NCBI GenBank assembly: GCA_048013815.1
Contig: CM106585.1
Span: 16,430,001-16,494,000 of the forward strand
DNA: 64,000 nt
From: Setoptus koraiensis
Taxonomy: Eukaryota > Animalia > Arthropoda
Direction of reading: 5' to 3'
Positions 33,867 through 40,196 of this stretch are shown piece after piece. How positions within the stretch are numbered: the stretch's first letter is position 1; each line of letters opens with the position of its first letter. The position numbers were made by a program, and so were the translations under genes. The notes beneath the pieces are model-generated. The model ran no database searches, was not told the origin of the DNA, and was given only the letters and a program-made list of their open reading frames with translations.

Positions 33867-35831
33867 TTATTCTTTATTTTCTTCGCTGCTATAACATTTA
33901 TCATTCATCATTATTGGGTCGAAGCCCATTTTCTTGAAATTGGTGAATACAGTGCCTCCCTCACTGCTGTCAGACACCAGTACTGTTCGTCTGGGCAATA
34001 AATGGAACAGCAGATGAACATCAGACATGCTGAACTCGTTACATTCGTATAGTAATAATGAATCAATTGAAAGCCCAAACCATGATGATGATCTCAGTGC
34101 ATCTGGAAAAGTGCATAAAATCACGTTACAATCTTCATCATAATAAAAGGACCCAGAATCGTACCTGTATATCTTCAATTCGCTCAGCTGGTAGATTTTC
34201 TCTGCGATTGCCTCAAGTGAAAGATCACTACTAGCACATATCATCATTTTTGTATAATTCGGATATGATATTGTGTTGTGCAAATGAATAGCCAATGACA
34301 CAATAGATTTTATCCTGTTCGCCTCTTGTCCTGGCGCATTCACCATGAGAGAGACCCGATTGAATGCTGCTGATTTGATGGCCTCATCCACTGTGTGTTC
34401 ATAGTAGAGCTCCCATGGTATCAGCGTGTTTTTAGAAGCTAAGTCACTCACGACTTGCACGTCTCCACAACTTTTTTCGATAATTTCACGCAACAGCTCA
34501 TCGCTCGAAATTCGTCTAATCTTTCGTTTTAGACTCTCGCAACCCACGTTATGGTGATGGAACAGGACATCTTCATTGACCAACCAGTAATTGCCTGATT
34601 CTGATCGGTCGCGTTTACATTCTTCTTCACTCATCTCGATGGACACATGTAAAATTTCCTCGCCGTTGATGATTCTTGGACATAGAAATGCACTGTCTGA
34701 CCACAACTCTTCACCACTCACGCAGTCGTATTCGGTCATTCGCAATACGGATGAGGTGACTCTGTCGAAACCAGAATTCTTTTTTATGAATGACTTGTCC
34801 AGTGTCCCACTACACGGGAACGCCTCGAGAAAATGTCTCCATTGCCGAGATTCTCGGCCCCATCGTACGGTCGATATTTGTTGTTGACACTCTGGCAGGA
34901 AATAATCTGTGTAGATTTGCGACACACGATCCTCCAAATCACGTATCGCTTTTGGGCTGGTAATTCCTGCAGGTATGTAATGAGCAGTGCTTTCTTTATA
35001 ATGCAATTCAGCTTGTTCGCCGCTGATAATTGTTGGCACGTCAATATTTGGCAATGGGCCGTAGTATTGATCGAGAACGAGTGTGCGCAACCGCGATGGG
35101 CGATTGTTAATGAATTTTTTTAGTTCGTCTATATCTCTAGACTCTCTTATTGTCACCGATAGACTCTCCAAATTCGGGAAGAAGGTGAGAACGGCATCCA
35201 TCTGGTACTTCATCTCGTTATAATAACGGTTCCTTCTGATATCGATCGAACGCAACACAGACCAGGGGCAATAATCTGAATAATAAAACATATCGGTTAT
35301 AACCCCAATCACGCTGAGATGCAATAACCTTCCTTCAATCAATTCCACCGATCTTCTCAGTTCGTTAACGTCCTCAAGCATGACATGATCCAGTTTGAGC
35401 GTCGTCAATTGATGACAATTGGTCACAATCATGGTCAGTTCATTGGGTGCAAAGGATATTCCATGACAATTGAGTGCTGTTAGTAGGCTGCAGTTGTCAG
35501 ACGGACTGAAATATGAGTCTGGCATGAATCTTCTGATGGCATAGCATTCTGAATGCAGGGTGAGTCGTTTTAGTTTGGGCAGCTTGCGAACAATTGGCTC
35601 CAACACTTGACAATCTGGCGAATCCGAAATATCGCTACTGAGTGTGCCCTCCTCTAGATTTTCGTTATCAATAAGCTCGCTGAATCTCGTAGACACTTGG
35701 GCCAAATTATGTCGATCGAGTAAATCGTTTAAATTTTCGATGATAATGAGCAACAGCTCAGGCGGAAGCATATCCAGGCGCCAGAGAGATCCTTCATTAT
35801 TGGGCTGGTCGACCGAAGAGTTGATTGGCAT
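33867..35831 (-). CDS. F-box + LRR + catalytically dead UPF1-like helicase fragment, copy 1 (intact, 654 aa, intronless)
   Basis: F-box LDMLPPELLLIIIENLNDLLDRHNLAQVSTRFSELI; LRR-like units LPKLKRLTL, CHQLTTLKLDHV, FPNLESLSVTI, LRTLVLD; C-terminal ~350 aa follows UPF1 motif order with degenerate Walker A/B. Confidence 0.8.
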   Translation of the reverse strand: MPINSSVDQPNNEGSLWRLDMLPPELLLIIIENLNDLLDRHNLAQVSTRFSELIDNENLEEGTLSSDISDSPDCQVLEPIVRKLPKLKRLTLHSECYAIRRFMPDSYFSPSDNCSLLTALNCHGISFAPNELTMIVTNCHQLTTLKLDHVMLEDVNELRRSVELIEGRLLHLSVIGVITDMFYYSDYCPWSVLRSIDIRRNRYYNEMKYQMDAVLTFFPNLESLSVTIRESRDIDELKKFINNRPSRLRTLVLDQYYGPLPNIDVPTIISGEQAELHYKESTAHYIPAGITSPKAIRDLEDRVSQIYTDYFLPECQQQISTVRWGRESRQWRHFLEAFPCSGTLDKSFIKKNSGFDRVTSSVLRMTEYDCVSGEELWSDSAFLCPRIINGEEILHVSIEMSEEECKRDRSESGNYWLVNEDVLFHHHNVGCESLKRKIRRISSDELLREIIEKSCGDVQVVSDLASKNTLIPWELYYEHTVDEAIKSAAFNRVSLMVNAPGQEANRIKSIVSLAIHLHNTISYPNYTKMMICASSDLSLEAIAEKIYQLSELKIYRYDSGSFYYDEDCNVILCTFPDALRSSSWFGLSIDSLLLYECNEFSMSDVHLLFHLLPRRTVLVSDSSEGGTVFTNFKKMGFDPIMMNDKCYSSEENKE

Positions 35832-36333
35832 TGCTTGTGAATATATAGTAGGGCACTATTGGAACTGCCGTAAAATAGCTAGTATGGAAATGATAAAATA
35901 GATACAAGAGTTTGCACGAATTTGCAGAAAAATCTGGCCGAGATCGCTGATGTTCACTTGATGTATGTTGATGACGATAGAGACGATGAATCGAGGAATT
36001 TTATCATTGCTGGTCATTATTGAGATGGACAGTGTGATGCACACAAGCGGAGAGCGGGTATTCTGGACAAACAAGCGCCATTGTCCTTGCAAACAGACAA
36101 TGCTGACCAACTCACAACACTTTCGCTACCGCACTTCTCCAGTTGACATTCCCGTTAATGCGACGTGACCCGTGCTTAGAGCAGCTGAGCGTGCAAAGAA
36201 AAGAAAGGCAAGATAGATTGGAATCGGAATGGATCTCATTCAGACGATAGAGACATCTATAGAATTTTCGGATGACCAACCAAAAGTGACAGCAAATCAT
36301 TGAACAGAATAGTTTTACAATTGTAGCCTCATA

Positions 36334-37984: not shown

Positions 37985-38220
37985 AACGACTTGAGAAGCA
38001 TCAACAAAATTTACTCCACTAATCAGTATATTTCTAATGGTAATTTTGAGAATGTGCATGTGATCAACAATTTACATTAACTGCCATCTCTGTCTGTCAC
38101 AATAATGTAAAAATCTTCATCAATTCTGATAAAATCAAAACATTAACCACATTTTCGGTCAATTAGTCGTTGGGTGTTACCTAATTCGCACGAACAGCTT
38201 TCCAACTAGATGGTTTTTTA

Positions 38221-40196
38221 TTATTCTTTATTTTCTTCGCTGCTATAACATTTATCATTCATCATTATTGGCTCGAAGCCCATTTTCTTGAAACTGGTGA
38301 ATACAGTGCCTCCCTCACTGCTGTCAGACACCAGTACTGTTCGTCTGGGCAATAAATGGAACAGCAGATGAACATCAGACATGCTGAACTGGTTACATTC
38401 GTAGAGTATTAATGAATAAATTGACAGCTCGCATACCGCCGACAATCTCAGTGCATCTGGAAAAGTGCATAAAATCACGTTACAATCCTTATAATCTCCG
38501 TACGCACCGCGTACGTACCTGTATATCTTCAATTCGCTCAGCTGGTGGATTTTCTCTGCGATTGCCTCAAGCGAACGATCACTACCAGCACATATCATCA
38601 TTTTCGGATAATTCCGATATGATATTGTGTTGTGCAAATGAATAGCCAATGACACAATAGATTTTATCCTGTTCGCCTCTTGTCCTGGCGCACTCACTAT
38701 GAGAGTGATTCGATTGAATAGTGCCGATTCGATAGCCTCATTCACTGAGTGTATATTGGCGTACTCTCGTTGTCTCAGCGTGTTTTTGGAAGCTAAGTCT
38801 CTCACGACTTGCACGTCTCCACAACTTTTCTCGATGATTTCACGCAACAACCCATCGCCCGAAATCCGTCTAATCTTCCGTTTTATATTATCGCAACCGA
38901 AGTTATAGTAATCGCACAGGGCAGTTTGATTGACCAACCAGTAATTGCCTGATTCTGATCGGTCCTGTTTATATTCTTCCTCACTCACCCGGAAGTGTAA
39001 ACGTGAAATTTCCTCGCCGTTGATGAGGTGGTACTTGAGTAATCCACCAGTGGACCACAACTCTTCACCACTCACGCAGTCGTATTCGGTCATTCGAATT
39101 CCAACGGACAAGTCATTCATTCTTAGGAATGACTTGTCCAGTGTCTGACCACACGGGAACGCAAAGAGAAGATAGCTGTAATATTCATATCTTCGTTCCC
39201 ATCGAACGGTCGATATTTGTTGTTGACACTCTGGCAGCAGATAATCTGTGTAGATTTGCGACACACGATCCTCCAAATCACGTATCGCTTTTGGGATGGT
39301 AATTCCTGCAGGTATGTAGTGAGCAGTGCTTTCTTTATAATGCAATTCAGCTTGTTCGCCGCTGATAATTGTGGGCACGTCAATATTTGGCAATGGGCCG
39401 TAGTATTGATCGAGAACGAGGGTGCGCAACGGCGTTCTCAAACGGTTCAAGATTCTAACCAGCTCGTCTAAATCTCTCGACGTTCTTATTGTAACCGATA
39501 GACTCTCCAAATTCCGATATGAGAAGAGAACGGCACTTATCTGGCCCTCGCCATCGTCCCCATAATGATGGTTCCTTCTCATATCCATCGAACGCAAAAC
39601 AGCCCTAGGCGGATTACCCGGATGACACATCAAATAGCGACTTAAACCAAACTCATCGGTTATAACCCCAATCACGCTGAGATGCAATAACCTTACATGA
39701 ACCAGTCCCATCAATCTTTTCAGTTCGCCAGGGTCCTCAAGCATGACATGATCCAGCTTGAGCGTCGTCAATTGATGACAATTGGTCACAATCATGGTCA
39801 GTTCATCGGGTGCAAAGGATATTCCATGACAATTGAGTGCTGTTAGTAGGCTGCAGTTGTCAGACAAACTGAAATATGAGTCTGGCATGAATCTTCTGAT
39901 GGCATAGCATTCTGAATGGAGGGTGAGTCGTTTTAGTTTGGGCAGCTTGCGAACAATTGGCTCCAACACTTGACATATGGCGAATCCGAAATATTACTAC
40001 TGAGTGTGCCATCCTCTAGATCTTTGTTTTTCAGATCGATGAGCTGGCTGAATATAATAGACACTTGGGCCAAATTATGTCGATCGAGTAAATCCTTTAA
40101 CTTTTCGATGATAGGGAGCAACAGCTCAGGCGGCAACATTTCCAGGCGCCAGAGAAATCCTTCATTGTGCTGGTCGACCGAAGTGTTGGTTGACAT
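38221..40196 (-). pseudogene. F-box-LRR-UPF1-like gene, copy 2, with a 1-nt deletion near 39975 separating the F-box from the rest
   Basis: Copy 1 reads cca gat tgt caa gtg (PDCQV); copy 2 reads cca tat gtc aag tg, one base shorter. The F-box (ATG 40196) runs out of frame, and the remaining 582 codons (38221-39969) stay open. Confidence 0.75.

What the first reader, a model, noticed from the sequence alone, without database searches (positions are those of the whole stretch)
34050..39760. Hypervariable patches in F-box paralogues inside an otherwise near-identical duplication
Seen: in the same duplicated unit, parvin exons, introns and the downstream spacer are almost identical, but F-box copies 1 and 2 alternate near-identical blocks (LRTLVLDQYYGPLPNIDVPTIISGEQAELHYKESTAHYIPAGIT) with heavily changed, indel-containing ones. 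Examples: distal LRRs MFYYSDYCPWSVLRSIDIRRNRYYNEMKYQMD vs EFGLSRYLMCHPGNPPRAVLRSMDMRRNHHYGDDGEGQIS (~35090-35370 vs ~39420-39730); 1B-like region GRESRQWRHFLEAF vs ERRYEYYSYLLFAF; and the segment before pseudo-Walker A, IPWELYYEHTVD vs RQREYANIHSVN. Established: F-box and LRR immune-type families show diversifying selection on ligand-binding faces. Inference: arms-race evolution of substrate surfaces in both the LRR and the pseudohelicase. Alternatives are gene conversion from distant paralogues, or an older duplication with parvin homogenised.
Basis: partly seen in the sequence, partly recalled or inferred. Interest (0 to 1): 0.75.

Follow-up and report, generated by a model that had tools for sequence, protein, structure and literature searches.

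The report
Gene-conversion mosaic in mite F-box paralogues
Two neighbouring copies of a gall-mite ubiquitin-ligase adaptor gene are a patchwork of near-identical and strongly diverged stretches because at least five copies keep swapping short pieces; diversifying selection on the diverged patches is possible but not proven.

Summary
In the 4.35-kb tandem duplication (31874-36226 / 36227-40612), parvin plus its upstream region is 98.9% identical and the spacer 98.7%. The F-box coding sequence is only 86% identical at DNA level and about 75% at protein level, alternating 97-100% blocks with 50-85% blocks.

The arms-race reading is only partly supported.
- Three more close copies lie outside the window, in inverted clusters 55 kb to the left and 75 kb to the right. 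The nearest relative changes block by block: quartet sites split 18:21:16 over the three trees, and the PHI test gives P=0.0005.
- Synonymous divergence is about three times higher in the amino-acid-variable windows, so dN is roughly equal to dS.
- A plain site model gives ω≈8. Once per-site rate classes are allowed, this falls to ω≈1.5-2 (P 0.003-0.012).
- The genes are not decaying. About 24 coding indels preserve the reading frame, core strands are invariant, and about 30% of codons have ω=0.

My best reading is concerted evolution by short-tract gene conversion, with islands of older sequence at low-constraint or diversity-favoured positions. The pattern is known from Hessian-fly salivary gene arrays. 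The earlier notes that I used concerned the protein's architecture.

The parts
31874..36226 (.). Tandem duplication unit 1 (parvin copy 1 plus F-box copy W1 plus about 400 nt upstream of W1)
   Evidence: aligns end to end with 36227-40612 at 92%
36227..40612 (.). Tandem duplication unit 2 (parvin copy 2 plus F-box copy W2)
31981..33630 (+). Parvin-like gene, copy 1: three open pieces (31981-32340, 32413-32724, 32839-33630) separated by short introns, with two CH domains
   Evidence: PF00307 CH hits; 82% to Fragariocoptes setiger beta-parvin; 99.2-99.7% identical to copy 2
36334..37984 (+). Parvin-like gene, copy 2
33867..35831 (-). F-box copy W1, an intact 654-aa ORF. Layout: F-box 20-59, LRR about 74-257, conserved junction 258-316, beta-barrel 317-418, stalk helices 419-468, single RecA1-like domain 469-654
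   Evidence: PF12937, 25.3 bits; AF2, pLDDT 72; Foldseek UPF1, E 1.8e-13
38221..40196 (-). F-box copy W2. Open from residue 74-equivalent to the stop (38221-39975). The F-box piece (39939-40196) is in another frame because of a one-base gap at 39974/39975
40687..42858 (-). F-box copy W3, a diverged subfamily (about 45-49% aa identity to W1), interrupted by one TAA at 41764-41766
35060..35368 (-). Variable island 1 in W1 (distal LRR helices and loops, aa 155-258). The W2 equivalent is 39399-39731. 50-82% identical, with several in-frame indels
34484..34882 (-). Variable island 2 in W1 (beta-barrel and start of stalk, aa 317-450). The W2 equivalent is 38838-39221
34364..34423 (-). Variable island 3 in W1 (loop before the degenerate P-loop, aa 470-490). 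The W2 equivalent is 38718-38777. Here W1 is the odd one out: W2, Lf1, Lf2 and R1 share the other allele
34055..34195 (-). Variable island 4 in W1 (RecA1 loop and helix, aa 546-593). The W2 equivalent is 38409-38549. Over CDS nt 1718-1777, W1 equals Lf1 at 100% and W2 is 77% to all
34883..35059 (-). Conserved block (LRR-helicase junction, aa 258-317), 96-100% identical among W1, W2, Lf1 and Lf2. The W2 equivalent is 39222-39398
   Evidence: pS 0.05, ω 0.21
33870..34054 (-). Conserved 3' block (aa 593-654), 97-100% identical in all five copies, including the otherwise 75%-identical R1 (dS 0.03)

Best explanation
The window holds part of a young, actively recombining array of lineage-restricted genes in an eriophyoid (gall) mite. 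Each gene encodes an F-box, leucine-rich repeats and the inactivated first half of a UPF1-type helicase.

At least five close copies exchange sequence by short-tract gene conversion and unequal or ectopic recombination. They are W1 and W2 in the window, Lf1 and Lf2 about 55 kb to the left in inverted orientation, and R1 about 75 kb to the right. Several pseudogene fragments on both chromosomes also share patches with them.

This exchange keeps the 4.35-kb unit's parvin gene, the spacers and certain F-box blocks 97-100% identical, synonymous sites included. The 'hypervariable patches' are islands of older sequence that escape homogenisation. They always lie at the same positions: distal LRR helices and loops, the beta-barrel, and loops of the RecA-like domain.

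Shown here:
- the mosaic structure and the phylogenetic conflict along the gene;
- significant shared tracts between pairs of copies;
- synonymous divergence three times higher inside the islands;
- maintenance of the reading frame.

Inferred, not shown:
- Why the islands persist. Either conversion tracts abort in already-diverged, weakly constrained segments (a neutral mismatch barrier), or selection favours copies that differ there (diversifying selection). I hold the two about equally likely, and they are not exclusive.
For: 1. Flanks against gene: parvin and spacer are 98.7-98.9% identical, the F-box CDS 86%. The 860 nt downstream of the stop are 98-100% identical among W1, W2, Lf1 and Lf2.
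2. The nearest neighbour changes along the gene. Over CDS nt 713-772, W2 equals Lf1 at 100% and W1 is 73% to all. Over 1118-1228, W1 matches Lf1 at 97-98% and W2 is 70-75%. Over 1718-1777, W1 equals Lf1 at 100% and W2 is 77%. In the 5' part, W1 resembles Lf1, while Lf2 and W2 resemble R1.
3. Quartet-informative sites split 18:21:16 over the three topologies. PHI gives P=0.0005, and 45-67% of informative site pairs are incompatible. Permutation-significant shared tracts occur in most pairs. The top ML topologies differ by less than 1-5 lnL units.
4. dS between R1 and the other copies ranges from 0.03 (aa 593-654) and 0.08 (aa 74-153) to 0.5-1.25 in the middle of the same gene.
5. pS is 2.5-3.5 times higher in the amino-acid-variable windows in all six close pairs (P from 1e-5 to 1.5e-3). 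It is also higher when only codons encoding the same amino acid are counted.
6. A model with three whole-codon rate classes and no ω>1 class fits better (lnL -5407) than plain M2a with ω≈8 (lnL -5432).
7. Variable windows recur at the same places in disjoint pairs (rho 0.46-0.65). They coincide with the least conserved columns of the distant paralogues (identity 0.25 against 0.43, P=2e-10).
8. A related species has parvin but no F-box gene at this locus. Its next gene now lies beside the right-hand F-box cluster in the opposite orientation, which points to recent insertion and an inversion between inverted copies.
9. No extant donor of 95% identity or more exists in the assembly for the copy-specific patches. 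This fits retained old tracts better than recent import.
Against: - The tandem unit's boundaries lie outside the F-box gene. A simple recent duplication would have made W1 and W2 identical. The islands then need either import from donors that are no longer found, or long-term escape from homogenisation while unconstrained introns and spacers were homogenised. A purely neutral barrier does not easily explain the second case.
- Clustering of quartet site patterns is only modest (runs test P=0.02; PHI for the four close copies P=0.04). Part of the conflict could therefore be parallel change at hot sites.
- Most W1-W2 differences are private to one copy (68 and 98 sites) and are not shared with any other copy.
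- A residual ω>1 signal remains.
- The left cluster abuts a 100-N assembly gap.
Confidence: 0.62

Rival explanations
1. Arms-race diversification by point substitution. After a recent duplication, positive selection on substrate-binding surfaces drove rapid amino-acid replacement in the patches.
For: - Whole-gene ω is 0.7-1.16 among the close copies.
- Pooled ω is 1.27 in the distal LRR and 1.17 in the barrel, against 0.2-0.5 in the F-box, N-terminal LRR, junction and stalk.
- Some windows have pN far above pS, for example aa 154-173, 206-216, 333-352 and 409-428.
- M2a against M1a with rate classes gives LRT 8.8-11.8, P 0.003-0.012, ω2 1.5-2.0.
- About 24 in-frame indels against one frameshift, invariant core strands, and about 30% of codons with ω=0 show the proteins are under selection.
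- There is precedent in C. elegans F-box genes (PMC8120010).
Against: - Synonymous divergence is raised as much as non-synonymous divergence in the patches. Selection on amino acids cannot do this.
- ω for private substitutions is 0.74-1.36, and none is significantly above 1.
- The plain-model ω≈8 disappears once rate heterogeneity is modelled.
- Recombination is known to inflate site-model tests.
- The LRR concave strands are invariant.
- Patch alleles are shared between copies.
Confidence: 0.15
2. Relaxed constraint or decay. The copies are redundant and drifting towards pseudogenes, and the variable patches are simply unconstrained sequence.
For: - ω is close to 1.
- W2 carries a frameshift and W3 a stop codon.
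- Pseudogene fragments exist elsewhere in the genome.
- Variable columns are also the least conserved ones in the wider family.
- Loops are somewhat enriched among variable residues (37%, against 25-30% in helices and strands).
Against: - Four of the five close copies keep intact 654-675-codon ORFs despite 10-26% amino-acid divergence.
- About 24 coding indel events net to multiples of three, against one that does not.
- The LRR and RecA core strands are invariant, and 26-31% of codons have ω=0.
- Neutral drift after a duplication with 1-3% divergence cannot produce 25-40% divergence in the patches.
Confidence: 0.1
3. Directed diversification. The patches are rewritten by a dedicated process, such as cassette-like conversion from pseudogene fragments or local hypermutation, as in chicken immunoglobulin genes or antigenic-variation loci.
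For: - Pseudogene fragments on C2 (13.93 Mb, 8.97 Mb) and C1 (5.63 Mb) are the best match to W2 in some patches, at 88-94%.
- Hot loops carry four or five different length alleles.
- Changes are clustered within codons (68 private sites against 34 counted private codon changes in W1).
Against: - No donor reaches 95% identity or more.
- The substitution spectrum is ordinary (kappa 1.5-2.1).
- Nothing in the sequence points to dedicated machinery.
- This is germline sequence from a single assembly.
Confidence: 0.05
4. Assembly artefact. Near-identical blocks or chimeric copies were produced by collapse or polishing of a hard repeat.
For: A 100-N gap lies inside the left cluster at C1:16405932-16406031. 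The array is repetitive.
Against: - W1 and W2 lie more than 55 kb from the gap, on sequence uninterrupted by N runs from the left cluster through the window.
- The four intact copies have clean ORFs.
- The mosaic is seen among three separate clusters.
- Islands map to the same protein positions as family-wide variability. Polishing errors would not do that.
Confidence: 0.05

Closest known systems
Hessian fly (Mayetiola destructor) SSSGP-1 salivary gene cluster: 'unusual conservation' (PMC2955719)
   Same: - A tandem-plus-inverted array within tens of kilobases.
- Non-coding parts (there promoters, UTRs and the intron; here the neighbouring gene, its introns and the spacers) are near-identical, while the coding core is strongly diversified.
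- Trees differ between sub-regions.
- The authors' explanation is concerted homogenisation by short conversion tracts plus positive selection.
- The organism is a gall-inducing arthropod.
   Different: - Those genes encode small secreted proteins with signal peptides and reported strong positive selection.
- Here the protein is a 654-aa intracellular-looking F-box adaptor with no obvious signal peptide.
- Here ω is only about 1-2, and dS is raised in the variable parts.
- Here the variable and conserved blocks alternate inside the coding region.
Hessian fly SSGP-71 F-box-LRR effector family and Ralstonia GALA/RipG F-box-LRR effectors (review PMC4617103)
   Same: The F-box plus LRR architecture, a large and fast-evolving family, and a plant-manipulating parasite.
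   Different: - SSGP-71 proteins are secreted and bind plant Skp proteins.
- The mite proteins have no evident signal peptide and carry an extra UPF1-like pseudohelicase half.
- No evidence was obtained here for secretion or for a plant target.
Caenorhabditis F-box adaptor families (fbxa/fbxb/fbxc) (PMC8120010, which cites Thomas 2006)
   Same: - Tandemly expanded F-box genes.
- The F-box domain is conserved and variation is concentrated in the presumed substrate-recognition part. Here ω is 0.51 in the F-box against 1.2-1.3 in the distal LRR and the barrel.
   Different: - The recognition domains differ (FTH/FBA against LRR plus pseudohelicase).
- The nematode evidence rests on hundreds of genes and 330 isolates; here it rests on five copies from one assembly.
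- Here the mosaic caused by conversion dominates the signal.
Islands of divergence persisting under gene conversion between paralogues (for example GOT1 paralogues of Tigriopus, PMC3728101)
   Same: Paralogues are homogenised by conversion except for discrete islands, and conversion produces novel combinations.
   Different: Here there are more than two partners, copies in inverted and tandem orientation, many short islands, and in-frame length variation.

Membership tests
F-box proteins (SCF substrate adaptors; Pfam PF12937/PF00646) | N-terminal F-box motif of about 40-48 residues | tested here: met
   W1 residues 20-57 score 25.3 bits against PF12937 (cut-off 24.3) and 21.6 bits against PF00646 (cut-off 20.5). 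AF2 predicts three helices at 24-59. The long open piece of W2 lacks the motif because of the frameshift.
F-box proteins (SCF substrate adaptors) | Binding to Skp1 and assembly into an SCF ligase | not testable with these tools
   Needs a binding assay.
LRR domain | Repeated beta-strand/helix units with an LxxLxL core | tested here: met
   AF2 places strands at 119-123, 144-148, 171-175, 195-198, 223-227 and 250-254, alternating with helices. LxxLxL-type strands are visible in the alignment. No Pfam LRR model scored.
UPF1-like SF1B helicases | Fold: RecA1 with inserted beta-barrel (1B) and stalk | tested here: met
   The top Foldseek hits of the AF2 model are UPF1 structures (6ej5, 2xzp, 2wjv; E from 1.8e-13 to 6e-12), followed by IGHMBP2, ZNFX1 and Sen1.
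UPF1-like SF1B helicases | Walker A motif GxxGxGK[ST] and a second RecA domain (RecA2) | tested here: not met
   After strand 493-497 the sequence reads APGQEANR, with no GK[ST]. The protein ends at residue 654 after a single alpha/beta domain. It is therefore helicase-like in fold only.
Paralogues under concerted evolution with islands of divergence | Flanks and some blocks far more similar than other blocks, with phylogeny changing along the sequence | tested here: met
Paralogues under concerted evolution with islands of divergence | Synonymous divergence strongly heterogeneous along the gene | tested here: met
   pS is 0.05-0.08 in conserved windows against 0.14-0.24 in variable ones. dS between R1 and the others ranges from 0.03 to 1.25.
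Genes under diversifying (arms-race) selection | A site class with ω significantly above 1, robust to rate variation and recombination | tested here: inconclusive
   The plain model gives LRT 143. With rate classes the LRT is 8.8-11.8 and ω2 is 1.5-2.0. Counting methods give ω of 0.7-1.6. Recombination was not modelled.
Genes under diversifying (arms-race) selection | Variable residues cluster on a ligand-binding surface | tested here: inconclusive
   Only secondary structure and pLDDT were available, not coordinates. The LRR concave strands are invariant. Variation lies in LRR helices and loops, barrel strands 375-400 and helix 420-443.
Gall-former F-box-LRR effectors (SSGP-71 type) | N-terminal secretion signal | tested here: not met
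   Read by eye only. The W1 N-terminus is polar (MPINSSVDQPNNEGS...) and runs straight into the F-box at residue 20. No signal-peptide predictor was available.
Gall-former F-box-LRR effectors (SSGP-71 type) | Salivary expression and binding to plant Skp1 | not testable with these tools
   No expression or interaction data were available.

The most novel reading that the evidence does not exclude
The F-box-LRR-pseudohelicase array is a germline-diversified recognition repertoire of gall mites, serving either antiviral or innate immunity or manipulation of host-plant proteins. New specificities would be assembled by shuffling patch 'alleles' among paralogues and pseudogene fragments through gene conversion, and kept distinct by selection. 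This would be a convergent counterpart of Hessian-fly SSGP-71 effectors and of plant R-gene clusters.
Probability: 0.2. Interest if true: 0.7.

Novelty: new member of a known kind. Interest (0 to 1): 0.42.

Why it matters
The finding gives a clean, compact example in a chelicerate plant parasite of homogenisation and diversification acting a few hundred bases apart in one gene array. It shows that a naive site-model test (ω≈8) is largely produced by mosaic ancestry. If the islands prove to be kept distinct by selection, the family would be a candidate rapidly evolving recognition system in gall mites, whose immunity and host-manipulation genes are almost unknown. If not, it is an ordinary case of concerted evolution with weakly constrained loops.

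Tried and rejected
- Word-index protein search with W1 found nothing at E<=1e-5, so no cross-species orthologues were available for rate comparisons.
- I looked for donors of the copy-specific patches across the whole genome, using DNA searches with both copies and local BLAST of 90-nt windows against all fetched loci. 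The best matches were 88-94% and none reached 95%. Recent import from an extant donor is therefore rejected for those patches.
- Compensated frameshifts as the cause of the 'heavily changed' peptides are rejected. The DNA itself is 50-75% identical there, and gap events net to multiples of three.
- Plain M1a/M2a on one tree gave a spectacular result (LRT 143, ω≈8). I reject it as evidence because a model with only rate classes fits better.
- The first run of the rate-class M2a model failed numerically and was rerun with clipped probabilities.
- The correlation between variability and low pLDDT was weak (rho -0.21, P=0.12). The patches are therefore not simply disordered linkers.
- The gene following parvin in the related-species contig does not match the ORF after W3. 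It lies beside the right-hand cluster instead.
- The parvin gene was searched with one exon only, by reference. The spliced, joined model was not built or searched.

Full report
WHAT IS THERE

The window is G000:C1:16430001-16494000. A repeat search and self-BLAST show a tandem duplication of a 4.35-kb unit, 31874-36224 against 36227-40612, 92% identical overall.

Each unit carries two genes.
- A parvin-like gene on the plus strand. It has three open pieces and two CH domains. Its last exon is 82% identical to beta-parvin of the eriophyoid mite Fragariocoptes setiger, and about 68% identical to those of trombidiform and tetranychid mites. The genome is therefore an eriophyoid (gall or rust) mite. 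Only this one exon was searched, by reference. The joined spliced model was not built.
- An F-box gene on the minus strand.

There are three F-box copies in the window.
- W1 (33867-35831) is an intact 654-codon ORF.
- W2 (38221-40196) is open from residue 74 to the stop. A one-base gap at 39974/39975, relative to all the other copies, puts its F-box piece in another frame.
- W3 (40687-42858) is a more distant paralogue interrupted by one TAA.

PROTEIN ARCHITECTURE

Pfam finds only the F-box. An AlphaFold model built on nine paralogues has mean pLDDT 72. It shows:
- F-box helices at 24-59;
- six LRR strands between 119 and 254;
- a beta-barrel at 316-418;
- stalk helices at 420-454;
- a single RecA-like domain at 493-634.

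The best Foldseek matches are UPF1 structures, with E from 1.8e-13 to 6e-12. The P-loop position reads APGQEANR and there is no second RecA domain, so 'pseudohelicase' is a fair description. The word-index search found no homologue in the public protein collection.

CHECK OF THE OBSERVATION

Identities between the two units are as follows.
- Upstream region plus parvin exons and introns: 98.86%.
- Spacer: 98.73%.
- F-box CDS, residues 74-654: 86.13% with 40 gap columns.
- F-box CDS, residues 1-73: 88.9%.
- Upstream of the F-box gene: 94.9%.

Profiles in 100-nt and 60-nt windows show 97-100% blocks alternating with 50-85% blocks.

THE COMPARISON IS NOT TWO-WAY

Searching the whole assembly with W1 found 77 matches. 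Three of them are close, intact copies outside the window.
- Lf1 (C1:16408627-16410594) is 84% identical at protein level. Lf2 (C1:16412973-16414943) is 80% identical. They have the same 4.35-kb spacing as W1 and W2 but the opposite orientation, about 55 kb to the left.
- R1 (C1:16542775-16544802) is 65% identical and lies about 75 kb to the right.

All three are intact. Pseudogene fragments lie at C2:13.93 Mb, C2:8.97 Mb and C1:5.63 Mb.

The 860 nt downstream of the stop codon (spacer plus the 3' part of parvin) are 98-100% identical among W1, W2, Lf1 and Lf2. R1 shares only the first 240 nt or so.

RETICULATE MOSAIC

The nearest neighbour changes block by block in 60-nt windows.
- CDS nt 713-772: W2 equals Lf1 at 100%, and W1 is 73% to all.
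- CDS nt 1118-1228: W1 matches Lf1 at 97-98%, and W2 is 70-75% to all.
- CDS nt 1409-1468: W2, Lf1, Lf2 and R1 share one allele, and W1 is the odd one out.
- CDS nt 1718-1777: W1 equals Lf1 at 100%, and W2 is 77%.
- In the first 223 nt, W1 groups with Lf1, Lf2 with R1, and W2 starts like R1.

Formal tests agree.
- Quartet-informative sites support the three possible trees 18:21:16.
- The PHI test gives P=0.0005 for five sequences and for the four intact ones, and P=0.04 for the four closest. Between 45% and 67% of informative site pairs are incompatible.
- A GENECONV-like permutation test finds significant shared tracts in most pairs. Examples are W2-R1 at 210-328, Lf2-R1 at 99-183, W2-Lf1 at 1492-1610 and W1-Lf1 at 1717-1842.
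- The best ML topologies differ by only 1-5 log-likelihood units.
- dS between R1 and the other copies is 0.03 in residues 593-654 and 0.08 in residues 74-153, but 0.5-1.25 in the middle of the same gene.

This is the signature of gene conversion or recombination among paralogues.

SYNONYMOUS AGAINST NON-SYNONYMOUS CHANGE

Whole-gene Nei-Gojobori ω among the close copies is 0.7-1.16.

I split 15-codon windows by amino-acid divergence, which is independent of synonymous change. pS is then 2.5-3.5 times higher in the variable windows in all six pairs. For W1-W2 it is 0.234 against 0.067, P=1e-5. The excess persists when only codons that encode the same amino acid in both copies are counted.

In the variable windows dN is about equal to dS (ω 0.8-1.6 by this upward-biased partition).

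Substitutions private to one copy give ω of 1.36 (W1), 0.74 (W2), 0.81 (Lf1) and 0.76 (Lf2). None is significantly above 1.

I wrote a codon-likelihood implementation.
- M0 gives ω=0.92.
- Plain M2a against M1a gives LRT=143, with ω≈8 in 12% of sites.
- M1a with three whole-codon rate classes fits better than that M2a (lnL -5407 against -5432).
- With rate classes, M2a against M1a gives LRT 8.8 (P=0.012; ω2=1.55 in 74% of sites) for five sequences.
- For the four close copies the LRT is 10.5-11.8 (P=0.003-0.005; ω2≈2.0 in about 69% of sites; ω=0 in 31%) under each of the three topologies.

Most of the naive signal is therefore mosaic ancestry. A marginal ω>1 signal remains. Unmodelled recombination could inflate it.

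Pooled ω by domain is as follows.
- Distal LRR: 1.27.
- Barrel: 1.17.
- RecA1: 0.84.
- F-box: 0.51.
- N-terminal LRR: 0.35.
- Junction: 0.21.
- Stalk: 0.52.

NOT DECAY

About 24 coding indel events net to multiples of three, against one (the W2 gap) that does not. Four of the five copies keep full ORFs. LRR strands and RecA core strands show 0-2 changes each, while LRR helices, barrel strands 375-400 and helix 420-443 are about half variable.

Variability is only mildly enriched in loops: 37% of loop residues, against 25% in helices and 30% in strands. It is not significantly tied to low model confidence (rho -0.21, P=0.12).

The canonical concave LRR face, which is hypervariable in immune LRR receptors, is invariant here.

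POSITIONS OF THE ISLANDS ARE FIXED

Window divergences correlate between disjoint pairs. W1-W2 against Lf1-Lf2 gives rho 0.65, P=3.5e-6. The same columns are the least conserved among the distant paralogues (identity 0.25 against 0.43, P=2e-10).

Some islands are bi-allelic, with the alleles shared between copies. Others, the indel-rich loops at residues 176-217, 317-336, 352-362 and 557-569, have a different allele in nearly every copy.

No donor of 95% identity or more exists anywhere in the assembly for the copy-specific patches. The best matches to parts of W2 are pseudogene fragments on C2 and C1, at 88-94%.

LOCUS HISTORY

A contig from a related species (Logan SRR33593474; about 85% DNA identity, 98% parvin protein identity) is collinear with window 28204-33782. 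It has no F-box gene after parvin. Its next gene lies in this genome at C1:16538359-16538979, on the opposite strand relative to parvin and right beside the right-hand F-box cluster.

The simplest reading is that the F-box array was inserted or expanded here after the two species split, and that an inversion of about 75 kb then occurred between inverted F-box copies. This is independent evidence that the copies recombine ectopically.

A 100-N gap lies inside the left cluster. That cluster may therefore be incompletely assembled. No N runs occur between it and W1/W2.

INTERPRETATION

Best explanation, at about 0.62: concerted evolution by short-tract conversion and unequal exchange among at least five paralogues. 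Islands of older sequence persist at weakly constrained or diversity-favoured positions.

The open point is why the islands persist while unconstrained introns and spacers are homogenised. There are two candidates, held about equally likely.
- A mismatch barrier to conversion in already-diverged segments would be neutral and fits ω≈1.
- Selection against homogenisation would fit the residual ω of 1.5-2, the domain pattern and the maintained frames.

Rivals are pure point-mutation arms race (0.15), decay (0.10), directed cassette-type diversification (0.05) and assembly artefact (0.05).

COMPARISON WITH WHAT IS KNOWN

- The closest match to the pattern is the Hessian-fly SSSGP-1 cluster. It also has one inverted and several tandem copies, near-identical non-coding parts and diversified coding parts. 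The authors attribute this to short-tract concerted homogenisation plus positive selection (PMC2955719).
- F-box-LRR effector families of a gall midge (SSGP-71) and of Ralstonia (GALA) are architectural analogues (PMC4617103). The mite proteins lack an evident signal peptide and carry the extra pseudohelicase.
- Caenorhabditis F-box families show the same contrast between a conserved F-box and a variable recognition domain (PMC8120010).
- Islands of divergence under conversion are described for other paralogue pairs (PMC3728101).

The evolutionary pattern is therefore a new member of a known kind. The unusual protein architecture is the subject of separate earlier notes of this scan.

Noticed in passing
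L036 (Logan SRR33593474 contig) against window 28204-33782 and G000:C1:16538359-16538979: In a related mite, parvin is single-copy and is followed within about 0.9 kb by a 223-aa gene on the opposite strand. In this genome that gene (98% aa identity, with 1 TAG inside the match) lies about 75 kb away, beside the right-hand F-box cluster and in flipped orientation. This implies insertion of the F-box array and an inversion between inverted F-box copies.
   Followed up: partly
G000:C1:16405932-16406031 (about 24 kb before the window start): A 100-N scaffold gap sits inside the left F-box/parvin cluster, with F-box-type sequence on both sides. The left array may be longer than assembled.
   Followed up: no
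window 39974-39975 and 41764-41766: Single lesions in otherwise open copies. W2 has a one-base gap relative to the other four copies, at residue 74-equivalent. W3 has a single TAA, while its counterpart R3 in the right cluster (L006:1480-3636) is intact at 718 aa.
   Followed up: partly
window 25609-25908 and 26242-26541: A 300-nt direct repeat, 95% identical, with 633-nt spacing, inside the long minus-strand ORF 25244-27475 (743 aa). It looks like an internal tandem duplication in another gene.
   Followed up: no
window about 42000-64000: GC content steps from about 0.37-0.44 to 0.48-0.59 just beyond the F-box array.
   Followed up: no
G000:C2:13933922-13934816, C2:8974054-8976036, C1:5630388-5631370: Stop-riddled fragments of the same F-box subfamily lie on both chromosomes. 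The C2:13.93 Mb fragment is 99-100% identical to W1/Lf1 over about 70 nt of the F-box region, yet is the best match to W2 (88-94%) in parts of the barrel, stalk and RecA1 regions.
   Followed up: partly
window 33867-35831 (W1 protein): The word-index search of 5.8 billion public proteins returned no homologue at E<=1e-5, although the neighbouring parvin has more than 1000 hits. The family seems absent or unrecognisable in the deposited mite proteomes.
   Followed up: no
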